Shown here: positions 2,223 to 63,062 of the stretch, in pieces | Numbering within the stretch: position 1 is the stretch's first letter | How the letters are laid out: each line of letters begins with the position of its first letter | Virus record (IMG/VR): IMGVR_UViG_3300043464_002284 | Span: 173,916 to 237,915 of that record | Length of the DNA: 64,000 nt | Direction: 5' to 3' (one strand) | Notes under the pieces: generated by a model | Databases searched by the model: none | What the model was told of the DNA's origin: nothing | The model's input: the letters and a program-made list of their open reading frames with translations, nothing else | Program-made: the position numbers and the translations under genes

Positions 2223-2295
2223 GGGGCGTTCGTCTAATGGTCTAAGACGCTAGTCTTATTAACTAGCTAAGGGAGTTCGATTCTCTCACGCCCTA
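2223..2295 (+). tRNA. tRNA-Ile(UAU), CCA not encoded
   Basis: Acceptor GGGGCGT/ACGCCCT, D stem GTCT/AGAC, anticodon stem CTAGT/ACTAG with loop CTTATTA (anticodon TAT), T arm GGGAG-TTCGATT-CTCTC. Confidence 0.8.
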
Positions 2296-2781
2296 TTTTT
2301 GCTTTATAGTAAACTTTCTAGTGCTATTCCCAATATTCCTTCCTTTAAAAGTAGGAAGCTGACTATCACAATTAGGACACACTAAACGAATATTAGATAC
2401 AGACCAGTTATCTGCCTTACCATCTATATGATCTACAATTAATGTCAACTGCTTTCCGTTCCAATTCTCTCCAGACTGATTACAAACGAAGCAATTATTT
2501 CCATGTTTTTTTATTAGATATTCTCTAATACTTTTGTTATTGTTCCAACTACTAGCAAAGCTACCACTTGTTTCAATTTTTTCTATCTTATATTCGTAAT
2601 GACATTGTTTAGAACAAAATTTTCTATTGCGTAGCCTATATGGATATTCTTTATTGCAAAACAAACAGAATTTTACTCTTTTCGTTCTTTTAGGTTTGGC
2701 CTTATTGTTATAAGAAACTCCACAAGAACGAGAGCAAAATTTAGGGTTATCAGTTAATTTATCACAATTTACACATTTCAT
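2293..2781 (-). CDS. HNH endonuclease (free-standing, homing-type) with Cys-rich N-terminal repeats
   Basis: LIVDHIDG...NWSVSNIRLVCPNCDSQ; N-terminal KFCSRSC/KFCSKQC repeats. Confidence 0.9.
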   Translation of the reverse strand: MKCVNCDKLTDNPKFCSRSCGVSYNNKAKPKRTKRVKFCLFCNKEYPYRLRNRKFCSKQCHYEYKIEKIETSGSFASSWNNNKSIREYLIKKHGNNCFVCNQSGENWNGKQLTLIVDHIDGKADNWSVSNIRLVCPNCDSQLPTFKGRNIGNSTRKFTIKQK

Positions 2782-3408: not shown

Positions 3409-3954
3409 ATGATAAGCTCTAATGATGTACTAACACATACAGTAGATCCAAAATTTGTAGACTTAATAATTACCAATGCTAAAAAAGCAGAAATTGGTGG
3501 CAGGTCTCAAATTAGGAACTCTAAAAGCAGAGTATCCAATCTATCAGAAGATCAATTGGTTGGTCAAATATCCACCTACTGTGCTTCAATGATCCTTACT
3601 GGTTCTCCAGAAGGATATATACAAGCAAGAGATAAAGCAAACGCTAATCCTCTGGCTGGAGATAATGGTGTAGATATATCTGGTCTACCCAATATGGATA
3701 TCAAAGGTAGCCTAATGAGATATTCAAATAACCCATTAAACTATAGATTATTGGTTAGGCCAAAAGAAAGACACGATAATTGGATTTATGTGTTGGCATT
3801 AGTACCAAAAGAAAGACCTTATAAGACTTATCTTGTTGGCTGGGCTAATGATAATGATTTACCTTTAAAGCCCTATGATGGAGAAATAAAGTCTTTACAT
3901 GGAGCATACGTTATAGAAGCTAAGAACCTAAGAAAGATTGCGGAACTAAGATGA
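3409..3954 (+). CDS. Hypothetical phage protein, possible PD-(D/E)XK nuclease fold
   Basis: GVD...MDIKGS pattern; weak. Confidence 0.5.
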   Translation: MISSNDVLTHTVDPKFVDLIITNAKKAEIGGRSQIRNSKSRVSNLSEDQLVGQISTYCASMILTGSPEGYIQARDKANANPLAGDNGVDISGLPNMDIKGSLMRYSNNPLNYRLLVRPKERHDNWIYVLALVPKERPYKTYLVGWANDNDLPLKPYDGEIKSLHGAYVIEAKNLRKIAELR

Positions 3955-5195
3955 ACCGAAGACATTTTTTAAATCACTGTGCCGCAACATCTTCTCTGGT
4001 AGCATCTTCGTCTTTTTTTACTCAGTCTATTTTAGCTAATGCTAATGATTTAAAGAAAAGACATAAGAGTGCTATTCTTTTATGGATGGGTGGTGGCCCA
4101 AGCACTATTGATCTATGGGATTTAAAGCCGGGTGCTGCTACTGGTGGAATTTTTAAGCCAGTATCTACTAGTGCTGATGGTATTCAGATTTGCGAACATC
4201 TGCCACTAATGGCACAGCAAATGCACCACATGAATATTGTACGATCTATGAGTACAAGAGAAGCAGACCACATGAGAGGTCGCTATTATATGCACACAGG
4301 ATATGTTCCTAATCCTAATGTTGAGCATCCTAGTTATGGATCAGTCATTTCTCATGAATTAATGTCTAGCATACCACAACTTGATATTCCTCCATTCGTT
4401 AGTATTGGAGGAACCAGTATTGGTGCTGGATTTTTGGGAACATCTTATTCTCCATTCGTAGTTAATTCTAATGGAACAGTTCGTGATCTTGATATGGGCA
4501 TAGATCAGTCTAGATTAGACCAAAGACTCAATATGCTTAAAACTATCGAAGATAAGTTTGTAAATGAAAAACGTGGAGACTATGCTTCTGACCACTCTAA
4601 ACTTTTGACTAAAACAGTCAAGCTAATGACTAGTCCTCAGATGGAAGTATTCAAAGTATCTAAAGAACCAAAAGAAGTTCAAGAAAGATATGGTAATACA
4701 GGATTTGGCCGAGGTTGTTTGATGGCACGAAGATTGGTGGAAATGGGTGTTCCATTTATTGAGGTTGATCTTGGCGGATGGGATAATCATACTGATATTT
4801 TTAAGACTCTACAGGATCAAAAACTTCCAGAACTAGATAAGGCTATGAGTGCCTTGATAAGCGACCTTAGCGATAAAGGACTGTTGCAGGATACTGCTAT
4901 TATTTGGATGGGTGAATTTGGACGAACGCCAAATATTAATGGTAATGGTGGGCGAGATCATTGGGCTAGAAGTTGGAGTGTCGTTGTTGGTGGAGCAGGA
5001 TTTAAGGGTGGTATTGTTGTTGGAGAAACTAGCAGTGATGGTAAGGAAGTAATTACGGAACCATACTCATCTCAAGACTTAATGGCTAGTGTTCTTAAAT
5101 CATTAGGAATATCTTTAGAAACCAATTTTACTGCTAAAAATGGACGACCAATGAGAATTGCTAATAGTGGCAAACTTATTAAAGAACTATTTTAA
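3951..5195 (+). CDS. DUF1501 family protein with Tat signal (Planctomycete-type)
   Basis: MNRRHFL twin-arginine signal; WMGGGPSTIDLWDLKP, GGWDNH, GEFGRTP, GRDHW motifs. Confidence 0.92.
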   Translation: MNRRHFLNHCAATSSLVASSSFFTQSILANANDLKKRHKSAILLWMGGGPSTIDLWDLKPGAATGGIFKPVSTSADGIQICEHLPLMAQQMHHMNIVRSMSTREADHMRGRYYMHTGYVPNPNVEHPSYGSVISHELMSSIPQLDIPPFVSIGGTSIGAGFLGTSYSPFVVNSNGTVRDLDMGIDQSRLDQRLNMLKTIEDKFVNEKRGDYASDHSKLLTKTVKLMTSPQMEVFKVSKEPKEVQERYGNTGFGRGCLMARRLVEMGVPFIEVDLGGWDNHTDIFKTLQDQKLPELDKAMSALISDLSDKGLLQDTAIIWMGEFGRTPNINGNGGRDHWARSWSVVVGGAGFKGGIVVGETSSDGKEVITEPYSSQDLMASVLKSLGISLETNFTAKNGRPMRIANSGKLIKELF

Positions 5196-5545
5196 TGTCT
5201 AGAAAAATTTGTACTTATTGTGAGAAACGTAAAAACTTAGCAAGTTTTCCCAAACATAGTATGTACAAAGACAATCTTGACAGTAGATGTAGAAAATGTG
5301 TCAAGAAACATTCTAAGATACGAGTTAAGCTACATAAAAAAGCGCCACCAAAACCAGAAGTATGTGAGTGCTGTAAAAAGGTTCCCTACAAATGGGCCTT
5401 AGATCATGATCATGATGATAATAGTTTTAGGGGTTGGCTCTGCGAACCTTGCAATACTGGTATAGGTAAATTGGGTGATGATTTTCAAAGCATCGTTAAC
5501 GCTATGAATTATTTTCTTTCAAGACAAAAACGATATGAAAAATAA
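5195..5545 (+). CDS. Recombination endonuclease VII family nuclease
   Basis: CECC...LDHDH...RGWLCEPCNTGIG. Confidence 0.88.
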   Translation: MSRKICTYCEKRKNLASFPKHSMYKDNLDSRCRKCVKKHSKIRVKLHKKAPPKPEVCECCKKVPYKWALDHDHDDNSFRGWLCEPCNTGIGKLGDDFQSIVNAMNYFLSRQKRYEK

Positions 5546-5750
5546 GATTAAAGAACACCTAGCAGAAAACAATATGACATACTATCAACATTTTAAATTT
5601 GCTGTATTTTTTGGATGCTTATCTTTATTGGCTGGATTTTGTTTGATAATTCATGCGTTTTTTCCATGTTGGTTTCAAACTTCTGGCAGCGATTTGGTTC
5701 AGTCTATGGCGATAGTATTTAAGAAACGAAACCGATTAGACGATACTTGA
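5535..5750 (+). CDS. Small membrane protein (DUF6356-like)
   Basis: YYQHFKFA...AG..LIIHAFFP pattern. Confidence 0.6.
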   Translation: MKNKIKEHLAENNMTYYQHFKFAVFFGCLSLLAGFCLIIHAFFPCWFQTSGSDLVQSMAIVFKKRNRLDDT

Positions 5751-5775
5751 CAAAGGGACTACCGTATGGTAGAGT
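5747..5775 (+). promoter_or_regulatory. sigma70-type promoter for DNA ligase
   Basis: TTGACA-17-TAGAGT with TGn. Confidence 0.7.
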
Positions 5776-7102
5776 TGGGACAACACAGGAGAAAATAAAA
5801 ATGTCGTTTGAGCATCTTAATGGTTTTGTTCGTGATTTGAAGTCAACTAGCAGCACACTTGATAAAGTTGGCATTATTGAGGATTATACTTCCTCTAATG
5901 AGAGTGGAGCAAATTTTCTTAAAAAGATTCTGCTCTATACTTATCATCCTCTTTGGCAGTACAATGTAACTAGTGATAATCTTAAAAAGAAAAGTCATCT
6001 GCGTGGTAAAGTATACAAGTCTATATTTGATCTGTTGGATGCTTTGAAGAATAGAGAAATCACAGGTCATGATGCTATTGGAGCAGTTAATAGCTTTATT
6101 GACAACCAAAGAGAATACGAAGAACTCGTTCATTGCATCATTGACAAGGATTTGAAAACCCGTGCTGGAGATAAGCTGATTAATAAGGCTATTCCAGATC
6201 ATATCCCAACATTTAGTGTTGCTCTAGCGGACAAGTATGTTCCTAAAATCGTAGACTGGAAGGATGGATGGTATGTTAGCAGGAAGATCGACGGTGCTAG
6301 ATGTATTGCTATTGTTGATAGTAATGGCAATACTACCTTTTATTCCCGCACGGGAAAAATCTTTGATACTCTTGATATTGTTAGCGGTGGGATTAAAGCT
6401 TTGGGACTTACTAATGTAGTTCTTGATGGAGAGCTTTGTCTTGTTGATAAAGATGGTAATGAAGATTTTCAGGGAGTAATGAAAGAACTTCGCAAAAAAG
6501 ATCATACTATTCCTAATCCTTCCTACAAGATTTTTGATATGATTACCCATGACGAATTCTATAGTCAGAAAGGCGAAAAGAATAGGCCGTTCAGTATCAG
6601 ACTCAAGAATCTTACAGAAATTATGAAGAAAAATGAGTGTCCTTGTTTGACACTTCTGGAACAGTCTTTGGTCAAGGATGAAAACCATTTTCAAGAGTTC
6701 GTGACTGAATCCAATCAAAATGGATATGAGGGGCTTATGCTTCGATCTGACGCTCCATATAAAGGTAAGCGATCCAAAGACCTATTGAAGTATAAAGCGT
6801 TTTCTGACGATGAATACGAGGTTGTGGATGTTGAAATGGGGCCATTTCGCTATGTTAAAGATGGTGCAGAGTGTGAGGAGACTATGCTCAGTTGCGTAAC
6901 CATTAAACATAAGGGTTACGATGTTAGGGTTGGGTCTGGTTTTAGTATCGAACAAAGACAAGAGTTTTATAAGAATCCTAAGAAAATTCTTGGAAAGCAA
7001 ATAACTGTACAATATTTTCAAGAGACAGAAAACGAGAAGGGTGGGCTTAGTCTTCGCTTCCCCACTTTTAAGATTCTTCATGGAGAAGAAAGAGATATAT
7101 AA
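5747..7102 (+). CDS. lig: ATP-dependent DNA ligase (T4 gp30-like); real start probably ATG 5801
   Basis: Motif I RKIDGAR, LDGEL, YEGLMLR, LLKYK, C-terminal OB fold with LRFP; CAGGAG RBS before 5801. Confidence 0.95.
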   Translation: MTKGLPYGRVGTTQEKIKMSFEHLNGFVRDLKSTSSTLDKVGIIEDYTSSNESGANFLKKILLYTYHPLWQYNVTSDNLKKKSHLRGKVYKSIFDLLDALKNREITGHDAIGAVNSFIDNQREYEELVHCIIDKDLKTRAGDKLINKAIPDHIPTFSVALADKYVPKIVDWKDGWYVSRKIDGARCIAIVDSNGNTTFYSRTGKIFDTLDIVSGGIKALGLTNVVLDGELCLVDKDGNEDFQGVMKELRKKDHTIPNPSYKIFDMITHDEFYSQKGEKNRPFSIRLKNLTEIMKKNECPCLTLLEQSLVKDENHFQEFVTESNQNGYEGLMLRSDAPYKGKRSKDLLKYKAFSDDEYEVVDVEMGPFRYVKDGAECEETMLSCVTIKHKGYDVRVGSGFSIEQRQEFYKNPKKILGKQITVQYFQETENEKGGLSLRFPTFKILHGEERDI

Positions 7103-7107
7103 TAATT

Positions 7108-8103
7108 ATGCCACCAGCATGGAAAGAGCTAGGTTTTAGGAGTTATGATGCCTATATAAAATCTAGGCTCTGGTGGAACATAAGGCAACTAGTCTTAGAA
7201 CGAGATGGTAAATGTTGTCAAGTTTGTGGCTCTCCATCTAAAATGGTTCATCATATTGATTACACAAAAATTATCATGCTGGGTCAAGGAGATCAGCATG
7301 AATTAATTACGTTATGTGAGCCATGTCATAATTTTGTTGAACAAGATAAAAGAGTTTCTGAAAAGAAAAGCTTGTTGAATAAACTATTTGGTCAGCATAG
7401 CAAAAATACTTTAGATGAATGGCAAATTTGGGCTGAAAAATTTAATAGCGATATTGGTTATAATAGATCTCAAATACTAGAGCCAAAAAATAACCGCAAG
7501 AAAAAATATAAGAAAAAGCCTATTGTTTTATCAGATAAAGGAACAATAGAAAAACAAAAAGAACAACCAAAACCTGAAATTAAATCTCTTAGAGATGATA
7601 TTGATTCTTATATCAAGACACATAAACGTAAAAGAAATAAGCAATACAAAACTCTTGCTCCTGCTACTGATGAAAACAGGAAAGAATTTATTACCAATAC
7701 GGTTCGCAAATACAGTAGAAAAAGCAAAAAAAATATTAGGAGATATTTAGATAATCATAGACCGCTAATAGAATTACTGTTTAATCATCCTGAGGCAAGT
7801 GATAAGCTAAAAAAAACTATTGCTGAACATCCATATTTCATTAAAGAATCAAGAAAAAATAATGACACAGAGGAACAAAAAAGACAACGCAGAGACGAAG
7901 AATATCGAAAGAAAAAACAAATAGAACAGGAAGAAATTGTTCAGATTCTTCACCAACAAGAATATAAAAAACAGAAACCTAGAAAAAGGGTAAATCCGTT
8001 TGGCAAATTGCCAGTATGGACAAAAAATCATAAGACCACAATACCAAAACAAGAAAATCCATTAATGAAATATGTAAGGGAAGTAAAAGATAAGACCAAT
8101 TGA
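7108..8103 (+). CDS. HNH endonuclease domain plus long Lys/Arg-rich C-terminal region
   Basis: RDGKCCQVC...VHHIDY...LITLCEPCH. Confidence 0.8.
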   Translation: MPPAWKELGFRSYDAYIKSRLWWNIRQLVLERDGKCCQVCGSPSKMVHHIDYTKIIMLGQGDQHELITLCEPCHNFVEQDKRVSEKKSLLNKLFGQHSKNTLDEWQIWAEKFNSDIGYNRSQILEPKNNRKKKYKKKPIVLSDKGTIEKQKEQPKPEIKSLRDDIDSYIKTHKRKRNKQYKTLAPATDENRKEFITNTVRKYSRKSKKNIRRYLDNHRPLIELLFNHPEASDKLKKTIAEHPYFIKESRKNNDTEEQKRQRRDEEYRKKKQIEQEEIVQILHQQEYKKQKPRKRVNPFGKLPVWTKNHKTTIPKQENPLMKYVREVKDKTN

Positions 8104-8622: not shown

Positions 8623-9345
8623 TTGGAACCAACCTTTGAGGACATTATGACAGAGATTGTTGTTGAGAAAAAGCCGATTGTTATGAGTACCAGCAAGGCC
8701 GATGAGTTTTTCAAGAATTTTCCGAAGGATAAGGTAGTTGCCTATAAAGACTATTGGGAGAGTGTTCGCCCCAAGACTGACGAAGATATTTTCCGTCGCT
8801 ATCTCTTTGCCTATTGTTCAGTGCATACCACTTGGCAGGGTAATGTCAAGGGATACAATGCTATCAAGAATTTTAGCGAATGGGTAGATAGTAAAGAAAT
8901 TCTTTTGACAAAACTCCACAAGAGCGGCGTCGGTCTGCACAATAATCGTACCAATTATATCTGGGATTTTAGTACCAAGTTTTGGGCTAATCCTAAAGAT
9001 TTTTATCTGACTACTAAGAAGTATCATGTTAAGAAGCGAGACAGTATTCTGAATAAGATTAGCGGAATTGGTCTGGCTAAAATTAGCTTTGCTCTTGAGA
9101 TGATTCATCCCAATGAGGCAAGAGTATTGTGTGGAGATATTCATCAGCTTCGACTTTACGATGTTGAGGCTCTTAAATATAATAAAAGCAAGACTGGTTC
9201 GGCAATCTATAAGAAGATGGAGCGTCACTGGATGGTCAATTGTGGCAAATTGAAAGTTCCATCTTATGTAGCAAGGTCGATCTATTGGGATGATCTTCAA
9301 AAGAAAGAAGATAGTCGTTACTGGAGCTATGTTCTGGAGAGTTAA
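8623..9345 (+). CDS. HhH-GPD DNA glycosylase/AP lyase, Ogg (8-oxoguanine)-like; start probably ATG 8648
   Basis: ISGIGLAKISFAL helix-hairpin-helix and CGDIH, matching the IKGIGYKEASHF...DRH layout; GVGLHNNR. Confidence 0.75.
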   Translation: MEPTFEDIMTEIVVEKKPIVMSTSKADEFFKNFPKDKVVAYKDYWESVRPKTDEDIFRRYLFAYCSVHTTWQGNVKGYNAIKNFSEWVDSKEILLTKLHKSGVGLHNNRTNYIWDFSTKFWANPKDFYLTTKKYHVKKRDSILNKISGIGLAKISFALEMIHPNEARVLCGDIHQLRLYDVEALKYNKSKTGSAIYKKMERHWMVNCGKLKVPSYVARSIYWDDLQKKEDSRYWSYVLES

Positions 9346-11599: not shown

Positions 11600-11674
11600 G
11601 GGAGCGTAGTCCAATTGGCAGCAGACAAAGGACTTAAAATCCTTCCAGTGTGGGTTCGAGTCCCACCGCTCCTA
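11600..11674 (+). tRNA. tRNA-Leu(UAA) with short variable region, CCA not encoded
   Basis: Acceptor GGGAGCG/CGCTCCT plus A; anticodon arm AAGGA-CTTAAAA-TCCTT; T arm GTGGG-TTCGAGT-CCCAC; variable region CCAGT. Confidence 0.9.
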
Positions 11675-11704
11675 CTTAATCCTTTTTAAAATGAGTTTAC
11701 TCTT

Positions 11705-21167: not shown

Positions 21168-21531
21168 GATTGACGGAAGTTTTAAGTATAGTTGCCCAAA
21201 CTGCTCTAGCGATTATTGGGCTACCTTAAAACAAGTCAGATGTAGAGAATTTGTAATAGTTTGTGATTGTGAAACTATTTTAAAACCAAAACCAGTAGAA
21301 CTTATTAGAATAGTATACAAAAAGAAAAAACAAAAAAAAGTATCAGAAGATGTTTTAGATCCTGAAATTTTGGATCGTTGTTGTAAGTCTTTAATGTCTT
21401 ATGGTTTTGACAAAGAAGAAGCAACAAAGCTAATACAAAAAGCCTATAAAGATACAAAAAATACTGATTGTGCTACTTTGGTAAAAATGTCCCTATCTAA
21501 TTTTGGAGAAAATAATGGCAAATGCAATTAG
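21127..21531 (+). CDS. Zinc-ribbon plus RuvA domain III-like protein
   Basis: CPNC...CDC N-terminus; C-terminal SLMSYGFDKEEA...TLVKMSL resembles the RuvA C-terminal domain; directly upstream of ruvB. Confidence 0.65.
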   Translation: MTTINKIKNLRPTEIDGSFKYSCPNCSSDYWATLKQVRCREFVIVCDCETILKPKPVELIRIVYKKKKQKKVSEDVLDPEILDRCCKSLMSYGFDKEEATKLIQKAYKDTKNTDCATLVKMSLSNFGENNGKCN

Positions 21532-22417
21532 ACCCACTCGTTTTAGTGAGATTATTGGTCAGGCAGAGGTTGTGAATCGACTAGGTATCGTTGTGGCGGG
21601 CTGTAAAAACTCAAATGGTGTGATGCCTCATGTTTTAATAGACGGCCCGCCTGGGCTTGGTAAGACCACCATAGCGAGTGCCATAGCTACAGAGATGGGT
21701 GAGAATCTTTATACTGTGAATGGTGCTAATGTACGGAGCGTAAAAAATCTGTTACCATATCTTATGGGTATTGCTCCAAGATCAGTTCTTTTTATTGATG
21801 AAATCCACAGACTTCCAAAAATAGTGGAAGAATTCCTTTATCCTGTTATGGAAGATTTCGTTCTTAGTATTGTAGTGGAAGATAAGCCAGAGAATATTGA
21901 ATTGCCAATGTTTACCTTGGTGGGGGCTACTACTAGTGGGGGTAGTTTAAGTCAACCATTTTATGATAGGTTTCAAATTAAAGAACATTTGTCTTTCTAT
22001 AGCGACGATGATTTAGCTAAACTCGCCAGGTCGAACGCAGACAAGCTCGGACTAATGATTGACGATAATGATTTGCTAGAAATCGCAAAGAGGAGCAAAG
22101 GAACTCCGCGTATTTTAAATGGTAGATTGCAGTGGTACAAGAATTGCGTCTCTTACTATGCGGATAAGAAGATGACAGTTGATGATATATTTAATAATCA
22201 GGGTATTGATAAAAACGGGTTGGATGTGTATGATAAGATGTATTTAACGGTACTTACTAAATCTCGGGGTACGGCATTGGGTTTGAAAAGCATTTCTTCT
22301 TTGACTGGCATAGCTATTGAAACTATTGAAAATAGCATAGAGCCATATCTTGTTCGTCGAGGTTTTGTGGTCAGAACCCAAAAGGGAAGGGTAATAGGCT
22401 CATATAAAAATGAATGA
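21503..22417 (+). CDS. ruvB: Holliday junction branch migration ATPase RuvB; start probably ATG 21515
   Basis: RPTRFSEIIGQ, GPPGLGKTT, LFIDEIHRL, GATT, RSKGTPR, IEPYL, RTQKGR. Confidence 0.95.
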   Translation: MEKIMANAIRPTRFSEIIGQAEVVNRLGIVVAGCKNSNGVMPHVLIDGPPGLGKTTIASAIATEMGENLYTVNGANVRSVKNLLPYLMGIAPRSVLFIDEIHRLPKIVEEFLYPVMEDFVLSIVVEDKPENIELPMFTLVGATTSGGSLSQPFYDRFQIKEHLSFYSDDDLAKLARSNADKLGLMIDDNDLLEIAKRSKGTPRILNGRLQWYKNCVSYYADKKMTVDDIFNNQGIDKNGLDVYDKMYLTVLTKSRGTALGLKSISSLTGIAIETIENSIEPYLVRRGFVVRTQKGRVIGSYKNE

Positions 22418-22746: not shown

Positions 22747-23751
22747 ATGGCAGCTGGATTAGACGTCGGTACAAGCTATATTGTTTTATCAAAAGAAGAT
22801 AAAAAAAGCCACATCATGTATAAAGATTTTAGAGATGCATTTTATGTCATCAAACCCACAACACCAGTTGCTACAAAAATGATTGAAAAAGGTCTTGCTG
22901 GTAAGGTTTTCATTAAAGATAGTGACGGTTCTTTTGTTCTCTTAGGTAAAGATGCGATTGAAAAAGCCATAGAGAGAAACGACACAGCAAAAAGACCTAT
23001 GTATAAGGGTGTTGTTTCCGCTAAAGAAAAAGATGCCAAAAAGATCCTGGCTTTCATCTTGAAAGAAGTTGTTGGTCAAGCCTCAGAGGAAAACGAACAG
23101 CTTGTATTTTGCGTACCTGCTCAACCAGTAGATCAAGAAGATGAAGATTTTGATGTTGGATATCATGAAGATGTGGTAAAGACAATTTTAAGAGAGTGTG
23201 GATATAATGCAAAAGCAATAAATGAAGCCGAAGCTCTTTGTTACGCTGAATTAGATGTTGAGGACTATACGGGTATTGCTGTTAGTTGTGGTGCTGGGAT
23301 GACTAATGTTTGTGTTATGTTGAACGGTGAGCCTACTGTTGTTTTTAGTACAACTAAAAGTGGCGATTGGGTAGATCGTATGAGTGCCGTAGCAACGGGA
23401 GAACCAGACAGTGTTGTTCAAGCAGAGAAGGAGGGCGGGGGTTTTGTAATAGGAGAACCCAGCGATAGTCCTGTTTTGGGTGCTGTGTCAGCATACTATG
23501 AAAGACTGATCGACTATACAACTAAACAGTTAGCTCACGCACTATCTAATCATAAATCTTTGCCAAAGTTTAAAAATCCATTAACTATTGTTGTTGCTGG
23601 TGGAACTTCGCAAGCCGCTGGATATATTGAGCAATTTGCTAAAAAACTAGAAGAGAATGGATTTCCTCTTAAAATTAAAGAAGTAAAACATGCAGCAGAT
23701 CCACTGCACGCTGTTGCTAAGGGGTGTTTGATAGCAGCAAAGGTTTTGTAA
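22747..23751 (+). CDS. Actin-like ATPase (MreB/ParM/Hsp70 fold)
   Basis: Phosphate-1 GLDVGTS, connect INEAEA, phosphate-2 SCGAGMTN, adenosine VVAGGTS, AVAKG. Confidence 0.85.
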   Translation: MAAGLDVGTSYIVLSKEDKKSHIMYKDFRDAFYVIKPTTPVATKMIEKGLAGKVFIKDSDGSFVLLGKDAIEKAIERNDTAKRPMYKGVVSAKEKDAKKILAFILKEVVGQASEENEQLVFCVPAQPVDQEDEDFDVGYHEDVVKTILRECGYNAKAINEAEALCYAELDVEDYTGIAVSCGAGMTNVCVMLNGEPTVVFSTTKSGDWVDRMSAVATGEPDSVVQAEKEGGGFVIGEPSDSPVLGAVSAYYERLIDYTTKQLAHALSNHKSLPKFKNPLTIVVAGGTSQAAGYIEQFAKKLEENGFPLKIKEVKHAADPLHAVAKGCLIAAKVL

Positions 23752-24109: not shown

Positions 24110-25060
24110 ATGGCTAAAAAAAGATCCAATAAAAATAATTGTGGACTGTTTCCGTATATCAAAGAAGAACTATACGGGGATTTCTCAGATGGTCAAAAAA
24201 TACCTTGGTCTATTGAGAAGTTTCATATAGATCAACTGTGGAATGCTTCAACTGGCGAAGGTATTAAGGTTGCTGTTATAGATAGTGGATGTGATTTAAA
24301 TCACGAAGATCTTAAAGACAATTTTATCCAGGGTAAAAACTTTGTTGAACCAAACAAAGACCCTATGGACGAGAACAGTCACGGTACTCATGTTGCTGGT
24401 ACTATCTGTGCAAAAAATAATAATCTGGGGGTTGTTGGAATAGCCCCAAACGTACAGATCATGCCCATTAAAGTCTTTGGGGCTGATGGTCGTGGCGACA
24501 ACAGAACGGTCTCTAATGCGATTGTGTGGGCTGCTGATCATGGCGCTGATATCCTGTGTATGTCTTTGGGTTCTCCGTATCAGTCAGCAGATCTGGAATC
24601 AGCTATTAATTATGCTCTTAAAAAAGGAGCTGTTTCATTTTGTGCTGCTGGCAATGGTGGTGAATCATCAGAAATATATTATCCAGCTAGGTATGAGCAA
24701 ACAGTTAGCACCGGAGCAATTGACGAAAAATTAAATCGAGCTTACTTCACATGCAAGGGTAGCGAATTAGATTTTCTGGCTCCAGGATTTAATATCTTAA
24801 GTACTATTCCTGGAAATAAATATGCTTTGATGAGCGGCACCAGTATGGCTAATCCATTTGTTGTGGGATGCGCATCATTATTGCTGTCTTATGTAAGAAA
24901 AGCCAAACTAAATACTAAATTAAAAACAGCAAATGACTATATAGAAATTTTACAAAAATACACATTTAATTTATCTAATCCTAATTATTCTAATCATAAA
25001 GAATACGAAGGAAACGGTGTGCTAGACCCAAGGAAATTCAACGGATGGCAAGACCTGTGA
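24110..25060 (+). CDS. Subtilisin-like serine peptidase (S8), intracellular type
   Basis: VAVIDSG, HGTHVAG, AAGN, SGTSMA; no signal peptide; N-terminal GLFPY resembles the LIPY motif of ISPs. Confidence 0.95.
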   Translation: MAKKRSNKNNCGLFPYIKEELYGDFSDGQKIPWSIEKFHIDQLWNASTGEGIKVAVIDSGCDLNHEDLKDNFIQGKNFVEPNKDPMDENSHGTHVAGTICAKNNNLGVVGIAPNVQIMPIKVFGADGRGDNRTVSNAIVWAADHGADILCMSLGSPYQSADLESAINYALKKGAVSFCAAGNGGESSEIYYPARYEQTVSTGAIDEKLNRAYFTCKGSELDFLAPGFNILSTIPGNKYALMSGTSMANPFVVGCASLLLSYVRKAKLNTKLKTANDYIEILQKYTFNLSNPNYSNHKEYEGNGVLDPRKFNGWQDL

Positions 25061-25074
25061 AATGAGGTGATAAG

Positions 25075-25833
25075 ATGTTTAGATCTTTATTATTGATATT
25101 TTTTATTCTGTCTGGTATTCAATTAGGATTTGCTGGCACAATAGACCCTAACACTCCAGACTCAAAGCATATAGAATATGGGTCTAAATTTCATAGTGTA
25201 GTCAAGCTATGTTGTTTTGATGGAAAAGGAATGTCTTGTGGTTCTGCCGTAGTAATAGATCCACACTGGATAATTACTGCTGCTCATGTAGTAGAGAATT
25301 GCCATAGTTGGTCAGTCACAGTAGGAGAAGAACATTACAAAATTGATAAAATAATTATGCATGAAGATTATAAGACTGATATATTTGGATATAACGACAT
25401 CGCTTTAGGTTATTTAGAGAAAGAGATAAAACTAGATCACTACCCTGATCTATATAAAGATTCTGACGAGGTTGGGAGGGTGTGTTCGATGGCAGGATGG
25501 GGTTTTACCGGAACATTTAATACTGGAATAGAGAAAGCCGACGGAAAAAGAAGAGCCGGATCTAATTTTATAGATAGAACAGAACGAAAAATTCTGGTTT
25601 GCTCTCCCTCAAGACGTAATGAAAAAACCACAGAACTTGAATACCTCATAGGTAGCGGAGATAGTGGTGGGGGTCTATTTATAAACAATAAGCTTGCGGG
25701 AATTCACTCTTCTGTTATTGGATATGATGGTAAGCCAAATTCTACTTACACAGATGAGAGTTGTCATACGAGGATTAGTTTATATTCTGATTGGATTGAT
25801 TTGACAATCAAGGGGAATACAAATCCTCAATAG
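25075..25833 (+). CDS. Secreted trypsin-like serine protease (S1)
   Basis: Signal peptide; TAAHV, NDIAL, GDSGG. Confidence 0.92.
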   Translation: MFRSLLLIFFILSGIQLGFAGTIDPNTPDSKHIEYGSKFHSVVKLCCFDGKGMSCGSAVVIDPHWIITAAHVVENCHSWSVTVGEEHYKIDKIIMHEDYKTDIFGYNDIALGYLEKEIKLDHYPDLYKDSDEVGRVCSMAGWGFTGTFNTGIEKADGKRRAGSNFIDRTERKILVCSPSRRNEKTTELEYLIGSGDSGGGLFINNKLAGIHSSVIGYDGKPNSTYTDESCHTRISLYSDWIDLTIKGNTNPQ

Positions 25834-39100: not shown

Positions 39101-39930
39101 GCAATCGTTTACTATATATATATCAGAAAGAGAGAGTATTAAAAGTCTATCATGGGGCAGAAGTCTATGAATCCAGAGGTATAATACTTGAAAAGATGAT
39201 AAAAGAAGCAGCAGAGTCTCAGGAGATAAATCAAAACTATAGATTTTTGATTAACACAGATGACTCCCCAATACAACATAATATTAATGGCATATCCTGT
39301 TATTCTTTTAGCACAATAACAAAAGACTACGATCATTGCTGTCCGTGTTATATTTTTCATAGCTGGCCCGAAGTAGGTATCGACAACTATTCTCGTCTGA
39401 CGGATTCCTTTATCGACTCTGAACCAGAATCATCAAAAGTTGGATGGATAGGACATCCAATGAGTATACCAAGAAAAATATTTAACGCTTATTATTCTAA
39501 CACATATTTTAGTCAAAGCCTAATTAATGATTGGAATAGATCAGACCCAAAACAACTACATATTCACACTAAAACATATTTGACTTTTCAGCAACAAATA
39601 GACAAATGGAAATACCTGATAGACTTCGAAGGAGCAGGATATTCTGGCAGAACTAAAATTTTATTAAATTCTCCTAGAATTGTTTTCTTTGTGGATCGAG
39701 AATATCAAGAATTTTGGCAGAAAAAATTAATACCCTGGAAACATTATGTTCCAGTTAAAAAAGACCTATCTGATCTGGAAGAAAACTACTCTAAAATAGA
39801 AAAAGATAAAGATTTACAACGATATATTAAAAATGAACAAAAACAATTTTGTCAAGAAAATCTTTTATACAAACACGCTATCCTTGAACTACAAAGAATA
39901 ATTAAAGAAAATATATATGTTGAAAGCTAA
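39097..39930 (+). CDS. GT90 / CAP10 domain glycosyltransferase
   Basis: KWKYLIDFEGAGYSGR, EFW...LIPWKHYVPVKKDLSDL. Confidence 0.85.
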   Translation: MSNRLLYIYQKERVLKVYHGAEVYESRGIILEKMIKEAAESQEINQNYRFLINTDDSPIQHNINGISCYSFSTITKDYDHCCPCYIFHSWPEVGIDNYSRLTDSFIDSEPESSKVGWIGHPMSIPRKIFNAYYSNTYFSQSLINDWNRSDPKQLHIHTKTYLTFQQQIDKWKYLIDFEGAGYSGRTKILLNSPRIVFFVDREYQEFWQKKLIPWKHYVPVKKDLSDLEENYSKIEKDKDLQRYIKNEQKQFCQENLLYKHAILELQRIIKENIYVES

Positions 39931-40930
39931 AATTATAGGTTGTGGACTAAGTGGTGTAACATCAGCAATTATCCTCAAAGAACGAGGATATGATGTGGAA
40001 ATATTTGATAGTAGAAGTCATATAGCCGGAAATTGTTATGACACAAAAGAAAATGATGTAACTGTACACAAGTACGGAGCACATATATTCCACACAAACG
40101 ATGAAGAGGTTTGGAGATTTTTAAATAGATACACATCTTTTAATTCTTATTCACACAAAGTAAGAGCTAATACTGACTATGGTTTAATTTCTATTCCCTA
40201 TAACTACCTTACACGCGATCAGATAGGAAAAGATTTAAGTCCGGAAGAAATACAGAAAACTATTTTTGTTGACTATTCTGAAAGACACTGGGGTATACCG
40301 TGGAAAGATCTGCCAAAATCTATTTCCTCAAGATTACCAAATAAGAGAGAGAACTATGACGATAGATACTTTACAGATAAATATCAAGGTATTCCATCTC
40401 TTGGATATACTTCTATGTTTTCAAATATGCTGGATGGTATAAAAGTAAATCTAGATGTACCAAAAAACCTTTACAAAAAAATTCTTAGAGATAACAATTA
40501 TGACATATTAGTATATACAGGCAAGCCAGATGATTATTTTGAATATTGTTATGGAGAACTAGAATATAGATCTCTCAAATTTGAGCATACTATCGCACCA
40601 AAGAATGGTCTATTTTCTTGGGAAAACGGGGCAGTAATTAATGAATGCAATAAATTATTATATAACAGAACTGTTGATAACTCTGTATTTTTAAATGAAG
40701 AAGTTAATCATACAGTATACACACGAGACTATCCAGAAGAACACAATAGCACCAACGACCCTATCTATCCCAAAAATTTTGGAAGTCACAACGATAAATA
40801 TAGCTTATATAACAGGCTGATGCATCAACAGAATAAAACAATATTTGTTGGAAGATTAGCTACTTATAAATATCTTGATATGTGGATGGCTATTAAACAA
40901 GTTTTTCAAAAACTAGAATTTAATATATGA
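39917..40930 (+). CDS. glf: UDP-galactopyranose mutase
   Basis: GCGLSG, HIAGNCYD, HKYGAHIFHT, WG, YFTDKYQGIP, LEYRSL, YTR, GRLATYKYLDM. Confidence 0.95.
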   Translation: MLKAKIIGCGLSGVTSAIILKERGYDVEIFDSRSHIAGNCYDTKENDVTVHKYGAHIFHTNDEEVWRFLNRYTSFNSYSHKVRANTDYGLISIPYNYLTRDQIGKDLSPEEIQKTIFVDYSERHWGIPWKDLPKSISSRLPNKRENYDDRYFTDKYQGIPSLGYTSMFSNMLDGIKVNLDVPKNLYKKILRDNNYDILVYTGKPDDYFEYCYGELEYRSLKFEHTIAPKNGLFSWENGAVINECNKLLYNRTVDNSVFLNEEVNHTVYTRDYPEEHNSTNDPIYPKNFGSHNDKYSLYNRLMHQQNKTIFVGRLATYKYLDMWMAIKQVFQKLEFNI

Positions 40931-43496: not shown

Positions 43497-44180
43497 ATGA
43501 ATACAAATAAAATATACGATAAAGTTTTTAATGAAGTCATAATAGCAATTAAAGACGAATACATAACAAAGATAGGAGGAGAAGAGTATGTGGCTAACAA
43601 CCATCATCAGGCTTCGACTCAAGCACACGATGGTTCTATCAAACAAATAGATATCCAACACCTACCACAACTAATCAATAAAAAAATTAGAAACTACCTA
43701 GAAATAGGATCCTATATAGGGGTGAGTTTTAGAATACTTAATGAAATTTTCAGTCCGGATGTTTGTTATTCTGTAGACCCTAACATACCACACAGGGTCT
43801 TTGCAAAACCCAGGAATGTTTTTAGAAAGCTTAATAGTAGCTATTTAAATAAAACAACTTTGCTTGATGCTTATTGGGTACAAGGAGGAAGTCCCACAAT
43901 AGATTCATCATATTTTACTCAATTAGGAATTCAGTTTGATCTTATTTTTATAGATGCTATGCACACATACGAATCTGTAAAATCTGATTTTTTTGAAGCA
44001 ATAAAAATCTTGTCCCCTGATGGTTTAGTATTATTGCATGACGTATACACTTGGCCAGAGGTTGGGCAATTTGTTGAGGAATTAGCATCAGACGATACGT
44101 ATATTATCAAGTACTCTCCTAAAGATGTTGCTATAGACGGATTTTGTACCATAGGCATAAATTATGCAAAAAATAATTAA
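43497..44180 (+). CDS. Class I SAM-dependent methyltransferase (Methyltransf_24-like)
   Basis: YLEIGSYIG, FDLIFIDAMHTYESVKSD, LSPDGLVLLHD. Confidence 0.9.
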   Translation: MNTNKIYDKVFNEVIIAIKDEYITKIGGEEYVANNHHQASTQAHDGSIKQIDIQHLPQLINKKIRNYLEIGSYIGVSFRILNEIFSPDVCYSVDPNIPHRVFAKPRNVFRKLNSSYLNKTTLLDAYWVQGGSPTIDSSYFTQLGIQFDLIFIDAMHTYESVKSDFFEAIKILSPDGLVLLHDVYTWPEVGQFVEELASDDTYIIKYSPKDVAIDGFCTIGINYAKNN

Positions 44181-45294
44181 TGAAATCAAGTTAGATTTTG
44201 ACGATGTCTTAATAAGACCAAAGAGATCAACACTCTCAAGTAGATCAGAAGTTAATCTAATTAGAGACTTCCACTTCAAGAATTCTCCAAGAAAAATTTC
44301 CGCTATACCAGTAGTAGTGGCTAATATGGATACTACCGGAACATTCCGTATGGCGAACGTGGTTTGTGAGAATCAAGCCATGGTGGCATTACACAAACAC
44401 TATAAACCAGAACAACTAATAGAATATTATTGTAGCAGTACTAATGATCATAAAGAACTAACGTTTTATTCCACAGGAACATCGTCTTCAGATATTGAAA
44501 AACTTACATATGTTTTCAATGCCATAAAAAATAAAGGATGTCTACTACCCAATATCTGTGTTGATGTTGCTAATGGATATAGTGAAAAATTTGTAAAAAC
44601 AGTAGCTCACATCAGAAAACTATATGAAGAAATAGTAATAATGGCCGGTAATGTCGTCACACCAGAAATGGTGGAAGAGCTTATTTTACATGGTAGGGTC
44701 GATATAGTAAAAGTTGGCATAGGACCAGGGTCGGTTTGTACTACCAGATTAAAAACGGGCGTAGGATACGCACAAATATCAGCTTGTTTGGAATGTTCGG
44801 ACGCTGCTCATGGTCTTGGTGGACACATTTGTGGAGATGGTGGATGTAAACACGTTGGAGATATTTGTAAAGTTTTTGGTAGTAATGCTGATTTTGTAAT
44901 GTGTGGAAACTTTTTCGCTGGATGTGAAGAATGCGAAGGAGAATGGGAATACGAATATCAGGCTGGAGTCGGCGTGGCATTAGCAGAGCCATTCTGGCAA
45001 CCATTTGATCCTGGGACTGGCGGCCCCAAAAGAAAGAAGAACCTAAAATTTTATGGAATGAGTAGCAAAGAAGCTATGGAAAAACATAATAATGGAGTTG
45101 CTAACTATAGAACAAGCGAAGGAAGATGCGTTACGGTTCCATATAAAGGACATGTTGAAGATGTTTTACTAGATATCTTTGGCGGACTAAGAAGCGCATG
45201 TACATACATTGGAGCATCTAAAATGAAAGATTTTGGTAAAAAAACCACATTCGTAATGGTCAACAATACTCATACAAAGACGTACGACAAATGA
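44164..45294 (+). CDS. guaC: GMP reductase
   Basis: LDFDDVLIRPKRS, ANMDT, ICVDVANGY, MAGNV, VGIGPGSVCTTR, CGDGG, FYGMSS, YRTSEG, GGLRSACTYIG. Confidence 0.95.
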   Translation: MQKIINEIKLDFDDVLIRPKRSTLSSRSEVNLIRDFHFKNSPRKISAIPVVVANMDTTGTFRMANVVCENQAMVALHKHYKPEQLIEYYCSSTNDHKELTFYSTGTSSSDIEKLTYVFNAIKNKGCLLPNICVDVANGYSEKFVKTVAHIRKLYEEIVIMAGNVVTPEMVEELILHGRVDIVKVGIGPGSVCTTRLKTGVGYAQISACLECSDAAHGLGGHICGDGGCKHVGDICKVFGSNADFVMCGNFFAGCEECEGEWEYEYQAGVGVALAEPFWQPFDPGTGGPKRKKNLKFYGMSSKEAMEKHNNGVANYRTSEGRCVTVPYKGHVEDVLLDIFGGLRSACTYIGASKMKDFGKKTTFVMVNNTHTKTYDK

Positions 45295-63051: not shown

Positions 63052-63062
63052 ACGGATATAAT

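What the first reader, a model, noticed from the sequence alone, without database searches (positions are those of the whole stretch)
3951..5195. Planctomycete hallmark DUF1501 Tat-exported protein on a phage
DUF1501 is greatly expanded in Planctomycetota and a few related phyla. An intact copy with an RRHFL Tat signal, embedded by ATGA/TAATG overlaps among phage genes, is a strong host clue. It is also an unusual auxiliary gene of unknown function. Planctomycete phages are poorly characterised.
Basis: partly seen in the sequence, partly recalled or inferred. Interest (0 to 1): 0.65.

Follow-up and report, generated by a model that had tools for sequence, protein, structure and literature searches.

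The report
Planctomycete DUF1501 enzyme on jumbo phage
A complete 238-kb freshwater phage carries an intact, exported copy of one core periplasmic enzyme-like gene (DUF1501) of uncultured lake planctomycetes, without the host partner it is predicted to dock onto, which points to the phage's host and gives a new handle on an unexplained planctomycete protein system.

Summary
Window 3951-5195 (+) is an intact 414-aa ORF with a full-length DUF1501 match (E 1.8e-103). It has an N-terminal RRHFL twin-arginine motif and ATGA/TAATG overlaps with its neighbours. The window is the last 64 kb of a complete 237,915-bp tailed phage with terminal repeats.

The gene came from Planctomycetota. All 80 best matches among 185,579 species genomes are planctomycete contigs by clade and context (one is labelled Chitinophaga). 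The nearest (74-80% identity) are freshwater Pirellulales MAGs. There the orthologue is a single-copy, near-universal gene directly downstream of a PSCyt2/PSD1 (DUF1549/DUF1553) partner.

The phage has only the DUF1501 half. Its codon usage is fully phage-like (GC3 0.23 against 0.75-0.97 in the hosts). It is under strong purifying selection (dN/dS 0.07-0.15). It sits in a nuclease-rich flexible island beside DNA ligase, and close relatives lack it.

The fold belongs to the alkaline-phosphatase/sulfatase superfamily, but with a non-canonical active site. A controlled complex prediction supports docking onto the host PSD1 partner (0.86; best control 0.00).

No DUF1501 was found in 50,697 GenBank phage records, in PHROGs or in the searched literature.

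The host assignment stays indirect. No CRISPR spacer was found, and phage and candidate hosts differ by about 25-30 points of GC.

The parts
3951..5195 (+). DUF1501 coding sequence (414 aa, P0001), an alkaline-phosphatase-superfamily protein of Pirellulales origin
   Evidence: PF07394, E 1.8e-103. (nearest relatives and tree). (fold). (dN/dS 0.07-0.15).
3951..4043 (+). Predicted Tat signal peptide, residues 1-31: RRHFL motif, hydrophobic stretch, A-N-A before the inferred cleavage site
   Evidence: Sequence. R3, R4 and F6 are nearly invariant. The same motif is found in all phage and cellular orthologues. The cleavage site is inferred, not predicted by a dedicated tool.
3409..3954 (+). Upstream 181-aa gene, translationally coupled by ATGA. 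It belongs to a phage nuclease-like family (DUF5843 / T4 endonuclease IV-like clusters) and is not a PSCyt/PSD1 partner.
   Evidence: It occurs upstream of DUF1501 in loci L082, L084, L097 and L098.
5195..5545 (+). Endonuclease VII gene, overlapping the DUF1501 stop codon (TAATG)
   Evidence: PF02945 E 5e-13; phrog_2633 E 3e-22..
5535..5750 (+). DUF6356 small protein, a conserved neighbour
   Evidence: E 7.5e-17. Synteny.
5747..7102 (+). ATP-dependent DNA ligase, the conserved anchor downstream of the island
   Evidence: phrog_114, E 2.6e-84. Synteny.
2293..2781 (-). HNH endonuclease within the flexible island
   Evidence: phrog_1271, E 5e-18. The block is absent from the close relative G009.
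2223..2295 (+). tRNA-Ile (anticodon TAT) at the island's edge
7108..8103 (+). Second HNH endonuclease, downstream of the ligase
8623..9345 (+). Ogg-HhH type DNA glycosylase, a conserved downstream neighbour
   Evidence: Synteny.

Best explanation
This is a host-derived auxiliary gene. A lineage of freshwater jumbo phages captured the single-copy core DUF1501 orthologue of a freshwater Pirellulales family. In those bacteria the gene sits directly downstream of a PSCyt2/PSD1 (DUF1549/DUF1553) protein that carries a CxxCH haem motif. The phage kept only the DUF1501 half.

Proposed mechanism, inferred. The gene lies in the DNA replication and repair module with overlapping start and stop codons, so it is probably co-transcribed and translated with those genes during infection. 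The product is exported folded through the host Tat system. In the periplasm it docks by its helical insert (residues about 147-226) onto the C-terminal PSD1 region of the host-encoded partner. In this way it would maintain or raise the activity of that two-protein module while host gene expression declines.

The protein has an alkaline-phosphatase/sulfatase-superfamily fold with a conserved but non-canonical set of polar residues. The most likely chemistry is metal-dependent hydrolysis or transfer of a phosphate- or sulfate-type ester in the periplasm. The substrate is unknown.

Shown here: gene identity, origin, intactness, selection, the missing partner, the fold, and in-silico support for docking.

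Inferred: export, timing, the benefit to the phage, the chemistry, and that the present host is a Pirellulales planctomycete.
For: Identity and intactness.

Genuine complete phage.

Origin. All 80 best loci among GTDB species genomes belong to Planctomycetota (L016 is labelled Chitinophaga but lies inside the planctomycete clade). The best reach 74-80% identity. In the careful tree the low-GC phage copies form one group (88/74). They are sister to the high-GC Pirellulales clade (95/93), the two together have 100/99 support, and both lie inside Pirellulaceae orthologues.

The donor contigs are cellular. The gene order is rpoA, PSCyt2/PSD1, DUF1501, MatE, arginine decarboxylase. The contigs are 61-70% GC.

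The orthologue is single-copy in 140 of 151 genomes of that family, although these genomes hold tens of paralogues.

No PSD1 or PSCyt2 gene was found in the phage, even at E<=1.

Long residence under selection. GC3 is 0.23 in the phage copy against 0.75-0.97 in the cells. dN/dS is 0.07-0.15 with dS up to 1.6. All 45 invariant family columns are kept, including D278, H280, R335, D336 and H337.

TatC is present in all 5 candidate host genomes tested.

Docking. ipSAE is 0.86 against 0.00 for the best of 3 controls. That mark was reached by 51 of 78 solved complexes and 2 of 108 mismatched pairs. The runs agree in at least 92% of contacts and the partner's pLDDT is at least 87. The interface includes the invariant residues R192 and L196.

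Second planctomycete-type gene. In relatives L116 and L117 a 627-aa VWA gene is coupled to DUF1501 by ATGA. It has single-copy homologues at 36-40% identity in all 5 Pirellulales genomes, and its Atlas clusters are commonest in Planctomycetota.

The 12 phage tRNAs mostly read A/U-ending codons, as expected for an AT-rich phage in a GC-rich host.

A different 45% GC, 261-kb contig (L114) carries the same orthologue in another gene context and nests next to lake MAGs (99/93).
Against: There is no direct link between phage and host. One 18-kb DNA query against 151 genomes of the candidate family gave no spacer-like match.

The phage is about 25-30 GC points below the nearest donor contigs. By my recollection that gap is large but has precedent in T4-like cyanophages of Synechococcus.

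The gene is dispensable. Four complete relatives with 79-81% identical terminase lack it. One of them has 94-97% identical flanking genes.

The predicted interface is somewhat less conserved than the rest of the protein (65-74% against 78-83% identity to the nearest host orthologues).

The complex test cannot tell which family member binds, and it is a model's own confidence, not a measurement.

The canonical sulfatase/LtaS Asp-His pair aligns to Glu-Phe in DUF1501, and no CxPxR motif is present, so the chemistry is uncertain.

The tmRNA tag of a relative phage (GETQLALAA) is only loosely like the Pirellulales tags (AEAQFSLAA, AEENLALAA).

Confidence: 0.6

Rival explanations
1. Decoy or exclusion. 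The phage protein docks onto the host PSD1 partner not to sustain its activity but to block or re-purpose the complex. It might, for example, alter an envelope structure used as a receptor by competing phages (superinfection exclusion) or shut down a host uptake pathway.
For: The phage carries only the half of the module predicted to bind the host partner. The gene sits in a flexible island that is present or absent among very close relatives, a pattern typical of phage-phage or phage-host conflict genes. Related phages couple it to another envelope-type planctomycete protein, the VWA gene.
Against: Every column that is invariant across cellular orthologues and distant paralogues, including the putative metal and catalytic residues, is retained in all phage copies. 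dN/dS is uniformly low. A pure binder would be expected to relax the catalytic core. Instead the interface is slightly less conserved than the core.
Confidence: 0.15
2. Relic of a past host. The gene was taken from a Pirellulales ancestor long ago, but the phage now infects another, lower-GC freshwater lineage (for example Bacteroidota or Verrucomicrobiota). There the enzyme works on its own, or with that host's PSD1-type proteins, as a periplasmic phosphatase/sulfatase-like scavenger.
For: The phage is 37% GC against 61-70% for the nearest donor contigs. Synonymous sites are saturated, so the capture is old. No spacer was found in the candidate family. The tmRNA tag of relative L091 starts with G-E, which by my recollection (not tested here) resembles Bacteroidota tags at least as much as the Pirellulales tags. 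The terminase family is very abundant in lake viromes (at least 580 matches).
Against: All top cellular homologues are planctomycete. A second, unrelated planctomycete-type gene (VWA) lies beside DUF1501 in relatives. A different phage-like contig carries the same orthologue and groups with present-day lake MAGs. The predicted docking onto a Pirellulales partner is strong. The tRNA set fits a host much richer in GC than the phage. One relative (L116) comes from the same metagenome, 3300044695, as a Pirellulales MAG that carries the orthologue (L011).
Confidence: 0.2
3. Artefact. The gene is cellular DNA joined to the phage by misassembly, or the contig is a misclassified cellular fragment.
For: None found. 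This was considered only because metagenome-assembled viral contigs can be chimeric.
Against: The gene has phage-like GC (0.38, GC3 0.23) while the cellular copies have GC3 0.75-0.97. It overlaps both neighbours by shared start and stop codons. The same gene occupies the same position in more than 20 independent viral contigs from different samples. The record has terminal repeats and phage hallmark genes.
Confidence: 0.01

Closest known systems
Planctomycete DUF1501 + PSCyt/PSD1 (DUF1549/DUF1553) gene modules (Kamneva et al. 2012, PMC3542564)
   Same: Same Pfam family at full length. Twin-arginine signal. The nearest cellular orthologues sit directly downstream of a PSCyt2/PSD1 protein with a CxxCH motif. 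The phage protein is predicted to dock onto that partner.
   Different: The phage encodes only the DUF1501 half. No PSCyt or PSD1 gene occurs anywhere in its 238 kb. Its codon usage is fully phage-like. The function of the cellular module is itself unknown.
Host-derived auxiliary metabolic genes of large aquatic phages, for example cyanophage psbA, pstS and phoA (from general knowledge, not tested here)
   Same: It is a conserved copy of a core host gene, under purifying selection, carried by a large AT-rich phage with its own tRNAs. The presumed role is to keep a host function running during infection.
   Different: The family (DUF1501) was not found in 50,697 GenBank phage records or in PHROGs. 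The function is unknown. The product must be exported by Tat and apparently needs a host-encoded partner.
Alkaline-phosphatase superfamily enzymes: PafA and SPAP phosphatases, NPP phosphodiesterases, S1 sulfatases, LtaS
   Same: The core fold is shared. VIA-align gives Z 17.8 for PafA (rmsd 4.2 A, 272 aligned residues) and Z 17.5-16.9 for NPPs and sulfatases. Foldseek gives E about 1e-5 for sulfatases and LtaS-type enzymes.
   Different: Sequence identity is only 9-15%. No PDB entry was found by sequence or profile search. There is no CxPxR formylglycine motif. The sulfatase G-D-H-G-R motif aligns to G-E-F-G-R. The family's own invariant motifs are W-D-x-H (277-280) and R-D-H (335-337).

Membership tests
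Pfam DUF1501 (PF07394) | Full-length match to the family HMM above the gathering score | tested here: met
   E 1.8e-103, 347 bits against a cut-off of 27, profile positions 2-390 of 390. Confirmed by the genome search.
Tat-exported DUF1501 proteins | N-terminal twin-arginine motif (RRxFL) followed by a hydrophobic region and an AxA-type cleavage site | tested here: met
   Residues 3-7 read R-R-H-F-L, followed by a hydrophobic stretch and A-N-A at 29-31. R3, R4 and F6 are at least 90% conserved. This is motif-level evidence only: no dedicated Tat predictor was available and export was not shown.
DUF1501-PSCyt/PSD1 two-gene module | An adjacent gene encoding a PSCyt2/PSD1 (DUF1549/DUF1553) partner | tested here: not met
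   No PSD1 or PSCyt2 match was found anywhere in the phage at E<=1. The upstream gene is a nuclease-like phage protein. In relatives the upstream gene is a VWA protein with no similarity to the partner. The feature is met in the cellular orthologues.
DUF1501-PSCyt/PSD1 two-gene module | Physical interaction of DUF1501 with the PSD1-containing partner | tested here: inconclusive
   The in-silico result is supportive. ipSAE is 0.86 against 0.00 for the best control. That mark was reached by 51 of 78 solved complexes and 2 of 108 mismatches. Contacts agree in at least 92% and the partner's pLDDT is at least 87. This supports binding but does not show it.
Alkaline-phosphatase superfamily (fold level) | Core alpha/beta fold shared with phosphatases, NPPs and sulfatases | tested here: met
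   AF2 model with pLDDT 79.4 and pTM 0.81. Z 16-18 to PafA, NPPs and sulfatases, with the aligned ranges spanning residues 30-414. Foldseek probability 1.00.
S1 formylglycine sulfatases | C/S-x-P-x-R formylglycine motif and the D-H metal/catalytic pair in the G-D-H-G motif | tested here: not met
   No CxPxR or SxPxR motif occurs in the sequence. The sub-threshold profile alignment places E322-F323 where sulfatases have D-H.
Phage auxiliary (host-derived) genes | Lies inside a bona fide phage genome between phage genes, and has a close cellular homologue | tested here: met
   (phage context). (cellular orthologue at 74-80% identity with cellular synteny).
Phage auxiliary (host-derived) genes | Expressed during infection, with an effect on host physiology | not testable with these tools
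No culture exists.

The most novel reading that the evidence does not exclude
Freshwater jumbo phages have repeatedly captured the one single-copy housekeeping DUF1501 of their Pirellulales hosts and plug it into the host's own haem-motif PSD1 partner. This would mark that module as a rate-limiting periplasmic machine during infection, for example for nutrient-ester acquisition. It would also give the first experimentally tractable entry into the function of DUF1501 and PSCyt/PSD1, which are among the most expanded and least understood planctomycete protein families. The entry points are a small soluble phage enzyme and a predicted interface.
Probability: 0.3. Interest if true: 0.75.

Novelty: new member of a known kind. 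Interest (0 to 1): 0.6.

Why it matters
No cultured planctomycete phage related to this lineage turned up here: the nearest isolate terminase is under 28% identical. This gene gives a concrete, testable host hypothesis for a very abundant group of lake jumbo phages, with at least 580 terminase relatives in IMG/VR.

DUF1501 and its PSCyt/PSD1 partners are among the largest protein families of Planctomycetota and still have no known function (PMC3542564). A phage has selected exactly the single-copy core orthologue out of tens of paralogues and kept it nearly unchanged through complete codon turnover. That argues this particular module matters for cell physiology.

The predicted DUF1501-PSD1 interface offers a direct experiment. 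The case would also add a Tat-exported, partner-dependent periplasmic enzyme to the known range of phage auxiliary genes.

Tried and rejected
1. A hidden partner in the phage. Pfam PSD1 and PSCyt2 searches of the whole 238-kb genome found nothing at E<=1.

2. The 627-629-aa gene coupled upstream of DUF1501 in relatives L116 and L117 has the same length as the host partner, so I tested it as a diverged partner. BLASTP shows no similarity and Pfam finds only a VWA domain. It is instead a separate planctomycete-type gene.

3. The window's own upstream 181-aa gene is not a remnant of either protein. It belongs to phage nuclease-like clusters.

4. Cyanophage phoA-type gene. I suspected from memory that this might be one. 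There is no tblastn match in 50,697 GenBank phage records and no PHROG match.

5. tmRNA as a host signal. The tag of relative L091 against three Pirellulales tags is ambiguous, and I had no tmRNAs of other phyla to compare.

6. CRISPR or other DNA matches. One 18-kb query against 151 genomes of the candidate family gave no spacer. It gave only a 180-nt, 73% match to a 2.7-kb low-GC contig binned in one MAG, which is a weak hint at most. The remaining 220 kb were not searched.

7. Nearest cultured phage by terminase. All hits are under 28% identity and carry no host information.

8. Sequence and profile searches of the PDB gave nothing significant.

9. Two independent captures. The ML tree puts L114 inside the cellular clade (99/93). 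The AU test does not reject a single clade of all phage copies (p 0.133), so this stays unproven. L114 was also not verified as a phage by hallmark genes.

The database was too small for this to mean much.

12. The big representative-protein search was not used. One word-index search and the family scans were enough.

13. The published bS21 phages of lake Bacteroidetes are a different group (293-331 kb).
Full report
**1. What is at the coordinates**

Window 3951-5195 (+) is an uninterrupted 414-codon ORF. Pfam gives a full-length DUF1501 match: PF07394, E 1.8e-103, 347 bits against a cut-off of 27, profile positions 2-390 of 390.

The N-terminus is M-N-R-R-H-F-L-N, followed by a serine/alanine-rich hydrophobic stretch and A-N-A at residues 29-31. 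That is a twin-arginine signal by motif. R3, R4 and F6 are at least 90% conserved in a 36-sequence alignment.

The start codon overlaps the stop of the upstream ORF (ATGA, 3951-3954). The stop overlaps the start of the downstream ORF (TAATG).

**2. The replicon is a real, complete phage**

The window is bases 173,916-237,915 of a 237,915-bp IMG/VR record with direct terminal repeats and 100% CheckV completeness. I found an 81-bp exact terminal repeat.

PHROG scans identify these phage functions:
- terminase large subunit and portal
- baseplate-wedge and tail proteins
- family-B-type DNA polymerase and ribonucleotide reductase
- rIIA, endonuclease VII, ATP-dependent DNA ligase and HNH endonucleases

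The genome is 36.8% GC. It carries 12 tRNAs, most of them reading A/U-ending codons: AGA, ACA, CAA, GAA, AAA, GGA, AUA, UUA, AGU and others. The closest cultured phage by terminase is under 28% identical. In IMG/VR at least 580 contigs encode a related terminase, so this is a large uncultured freshwater group.

**3. Where the gene came from**

A word-index search found thousands of homologues. The best 120 are all at least 78% identical and nearly all 414 aa long, and several lie on 223-262-kb contigs.

Among one genome for each of 185,579 prokaryote species, all 80 best loci belong to Planctomycetota. One is labelled Chitinophaga by NCBI, but it lies inside the planctomycete clade at 69% GC. 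The identities fall in tiers:
- 74-80%: freshwater Pirellulales and "Planctomycetaceae" MAGs, some with an implausible Kuenenia label
- 63-69%: "Pirellula sp." MAGs and the isolate SH449
- about 37%: paralogues

The donor contigs are cellular. In L025 and L004 the gene order is rpoA, PSCyt2/PSD1 protein (587-629 aa), DUF1501, MatE transporter, arginine decarboxylase. The contigs are 61-70% GC.

In a sample of 151 genomes of that family, 140 have a match at E<=1e-100 with 67-81% identity. Nearly all have exactly one full-length match. The same genomes hold tens of DUF1501 paralogues. The phage gene therefore corresponds to the one conserved, single-copy DUF1501 of this lineage.

**4. Phylogeny**

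I built a careful IQ-TREE tree of 59 rows under LG+C20+F+G4. Partial and identical rows were left out, as were database proteins whose genomic context I had not verified.

- The 16 low-GC phage copies form one group (88/74; recovered in 90% of bootstrap trees).
- That group is sister to the high-GC Pirellulales clade (95/93).
- The two together have 100/99 support, with the Pirellula-type orthologues outside.
- A quicker tree with 110 rows agrees.

A different 261-kb, 45% GC contig (L114) carries the same orthologue. Its neighbours are a split DNA polymerase III alpha, IS605-type genes and glycosyltransferases. Its DUF1501 nests beside two lake MAGs (99/93). This suggests a second capture. However, the AU test does not reject one clade for all phage copies (p 0.133), and I did not verify hallmark phage genes on L114.

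One caveat applies to the tree. The AT-driven amino-acid composition of the phage copies could help pull them together. The placement next to the Pirellulales clade does not depend on that.

**5. Residence time and selection**

The phage gene is 38% GC with GC3 0.23. The cellular orthologues have GC3 0.75-0.97, with a few at 0.45-0.6. The proteins nevertheless remain 74-80% identical.

Among phage copies, dN/dS against the window copy is 0.07-0.15, with dS from 0.26 up to about 1.6. All 45 columns that are invariant across phage copies, cellular orthologues and distant paralogues are kept. The capture is old, and the protein is maintained by selection.

**6. Genomic setting in the phage group**

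In every low-GC viral locus, DUF1501 lies immediately upstream of the block endonuclease VII / DUF6356 / DNA ligase / Ogg-type glycosylase. What lies upstream varies:
- a nuclease-like 181-aa gene, in this window and in L084, L097 and L098
- a SpoU methylase plus a tmRNA in L091
- a 627-629-aa VWA protein coupled by ATGA in L116 and L117

Four complete relatives (200-244 kb, terminase 79-81% identical) have no DUF1501 at all. One of them, G009, has ligase, DUF6356 and endonuclease VII at 94-97% identity to the window. There, only about 845 bp occupy the place where the window has tRNA-Ile, HNH, the nuclease-like gene and DUF1501.

The gene is therefore part of a flexible, nuclease-rich island and is not core.

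**7. The partner question**

None exists in the phage.

The VWA gene of the relatives is not a diverged partner. It is a second planctomycete-type gene. It has single-copy homologues at 36-40% identity over nearly its full length in all five Pirellulales genomes tested. Its nearest Atlas clusters are commonest in Planctomycetota.

The host partner P0121 has a signal peptide and a C-T-Q-C-H haem-type motif.

I ran one controlled complex prediction with mature phage DUF1501 (residues 32-414) and the mature host partner (residues 44-587). The result:
- ipSAE was 0.86 in three runs. The best of three controls was 0.00.
- The pass mark was reached by 51 of 78 solved complexes and 2 of 108 mismatched pairs.
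- Contacts agreed in at least 92% between runs, and the partner's pLDDT was at least 87.
- The interface joins DUF1501 residues 147-226, a helical insert that includes the invariant R192 and L196, to the C-terminal PSD1 region (residues 416-587).

This supports binding but does not show it, and it cannot say which family member binds. The interface residues are somewhat less conserved than the rest of the protein: 65-74% against 78-83% identity to the nearest host orthologues.

TatC is present in all five candidate host genomes.

**8. Fold and chemistry**

An AlphaFold2 model built from 36 sequences has pLDDT 79.4 and pTM 0.81. Foldseek finds sulfatases and LtaS-type enzymes at E about 1e-5.

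VIA-align gives effectively tied scores:
- Z 17.8 to the phosphatase PafA (rmsd 4.2 A, 272 aligned residues)
- Z 17.5-16.9 to NPP phosphodiesterases, SPAP and S1 sulfatases

This shows membership of the alkaline-phosphatase superfamily and nothing finer.

By sequence no solved relative exists. The only sub-threshold alignment puts G-E-F-G-R of DUF1501 against G-D-H-G-R of sulfatases. No CxPxR motif is present. The family's own invariant polar residues are H107, D278, H280, R335, D336 and H337. A metal-dependent ester hydrolase or transferase is the most likely chemistry. The substrate is unknown.

**9. Host inference: strength and limits**

For a Pirellulales host:
- the gene's origin and placement in the tree
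- a second planctomycete-type gene beside it in relatives
- a possible second capture of the same orthologue by another element (L114)
- the predicted fit to a Pirellulales partner
- a tRNA set suited to an AT-rich phage in a GC-rich cell
- the occurrence of relative L116 in the same metagenome (3300044695) as a Pirellulales MAG with the orthologue (L011)

Against, or missing:
- no spacer match in the one DNA search made
- a GC gap of 25-30 points
- an ambiguous tmRNA tag

**10. Comparison with what is known**

Kamneva et al. 2012 (PMC3542564) described the DUF1501-PSCyt/PSD1 modules, their twin-arginine signals and their unknown function.

I found no paper describing a phage-encoded DUF1501. 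Only two papers in the searched library mention both words. One is a 61-aa weak CDD hit in a Pseudomonas phage; I did not open the other, a Dickeya genomics paper. There is no match in 50,697 GenBank phage records or in PHROGs. IMG/VR holds at least 22 viral contigs with the gene.

Planctomycete phages have been predicted from metagenomes (PMC9040852 and bioRxiv 10.1101/655167), but not with this gene.

**11. Verdict**

It is a new member of a known kind: a host-derived auxiliary gene on a large aquatic phage. Two features stand out. It is Tat-exported and apparently depends on a partner that only the host encodes. It also belongs to a major planctomycete family of unknown function.

Interest is 0.6. 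Confidence in the overall explanation is 0.6. Confidence in the origin of the gene is much higher, about 0.95, and confidence in any specific chemistry is much lower.

Noticed in passing
window 22747-23751 (+), with 21503-22417 (+): A phage-encoded actin-like protein matches Pfam Volactin (PF25216, E 2.7e-62) and weakly MreB. It lies just downstream of a RuvB-like AAA+ ATPase. It may be a cytoskeletal or DNA-positioning element of this jumbo phage.
   Followed up: no
window 24110-25060 (+) and 25075-25833 (+): Adjacent subtilase (Peptidase_S8, E 5.5e-54) and trypsin-like protease genes. A trypsin-like gene also sits directly downstream of DUF1501 in relative L116.
   Followed up: no
window about 26000-48000, both strands: A low-GC (29-33%) glycan-biosynthesis island. 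It holds several glycosyltransferases, UDP-galactopyranose mutase (39917-40930), a 2OG-Fe(II) oxygenase, an HtrL/YibB-like gene, an AbfB-domain protein and an IMPDH/GMP-reductase-like gene (44164-45294).
   Followed up: no
whole genome G000; in the window, tRNAs at 2223-2295 and 11600-11675: The 12 tRNAs mostly read A/U-ending codons (Arg-TCT, Thr-TGT, Gln-TTG, Glu-TTC, Lys-TTT, Gly-TCC, Ile-TAT, Leu-TAA and others). This fits an AT-rich phage in a host with much higher GC.
   Followed up: partly
L091 5630-5980 (relative phage, 197-kb contig): A phage-encoded tmRNA with tag GETQLALAA lies immediately upstream of DUF1501. Tags in Pirellulales genomes are AEAQFSLAA and AEENLALAA.
   Followed up: partly
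L117 6121-8004 and L116 6115-8004 (relative phages): A 627-629-aa VWA-domain protein is translationally coupled to DUF1501. It has single-copy homologues at 36-40% identity in all five Pirellulales genomes tested, and its Atlas clusters are commonest in Planctomycetota. In isolate SH449 the homologue lies about 7 kb from the DUF1501 orthologue.
   Followed up: partly
L117 12987-14228: A second, distant DUF1501 paralogue (27% identical to the window protein; best Pirellulales match 37-38%) lies in the same relative phage, downstream of the Ogg gene.
   Followed up: partly
G000 81201-100883 (-), outside the window: A single 6,560-codon ORF, with neighbouring ORFs of 2,591, 2,232 and 1,833 codons, in the structural region of the phage.
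   Followed up: no
L209 (G140:C268, 2,693 bp): A 38% GC contig binned in a Pirellulales MAG shares a 180-nt, 73% identical stretch with a structural gene of this phage. It is probably a fragment of a related phage binned with the MAG, and at most a weak co-occurrence hint.
   Followed up: partly
window 62001-64000: Composition shifts abruptly at the window's end, which is also the genome's end: GC 0.44 and GC skew -0.31, against about 0.36 and +0.15 before.
   Followed up: no
L016, and L005, L008, L012, L013, L017, L019, L023, L025: The NCBI organism labels of several MAG contigs (Chitinophaga sp., Candidatus Kuenenia) disagree with their placement inside the Pirellulales DUF1501 clade and with their 61-69% GC. 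They are probably mislabelled bins.
   Followed up: no
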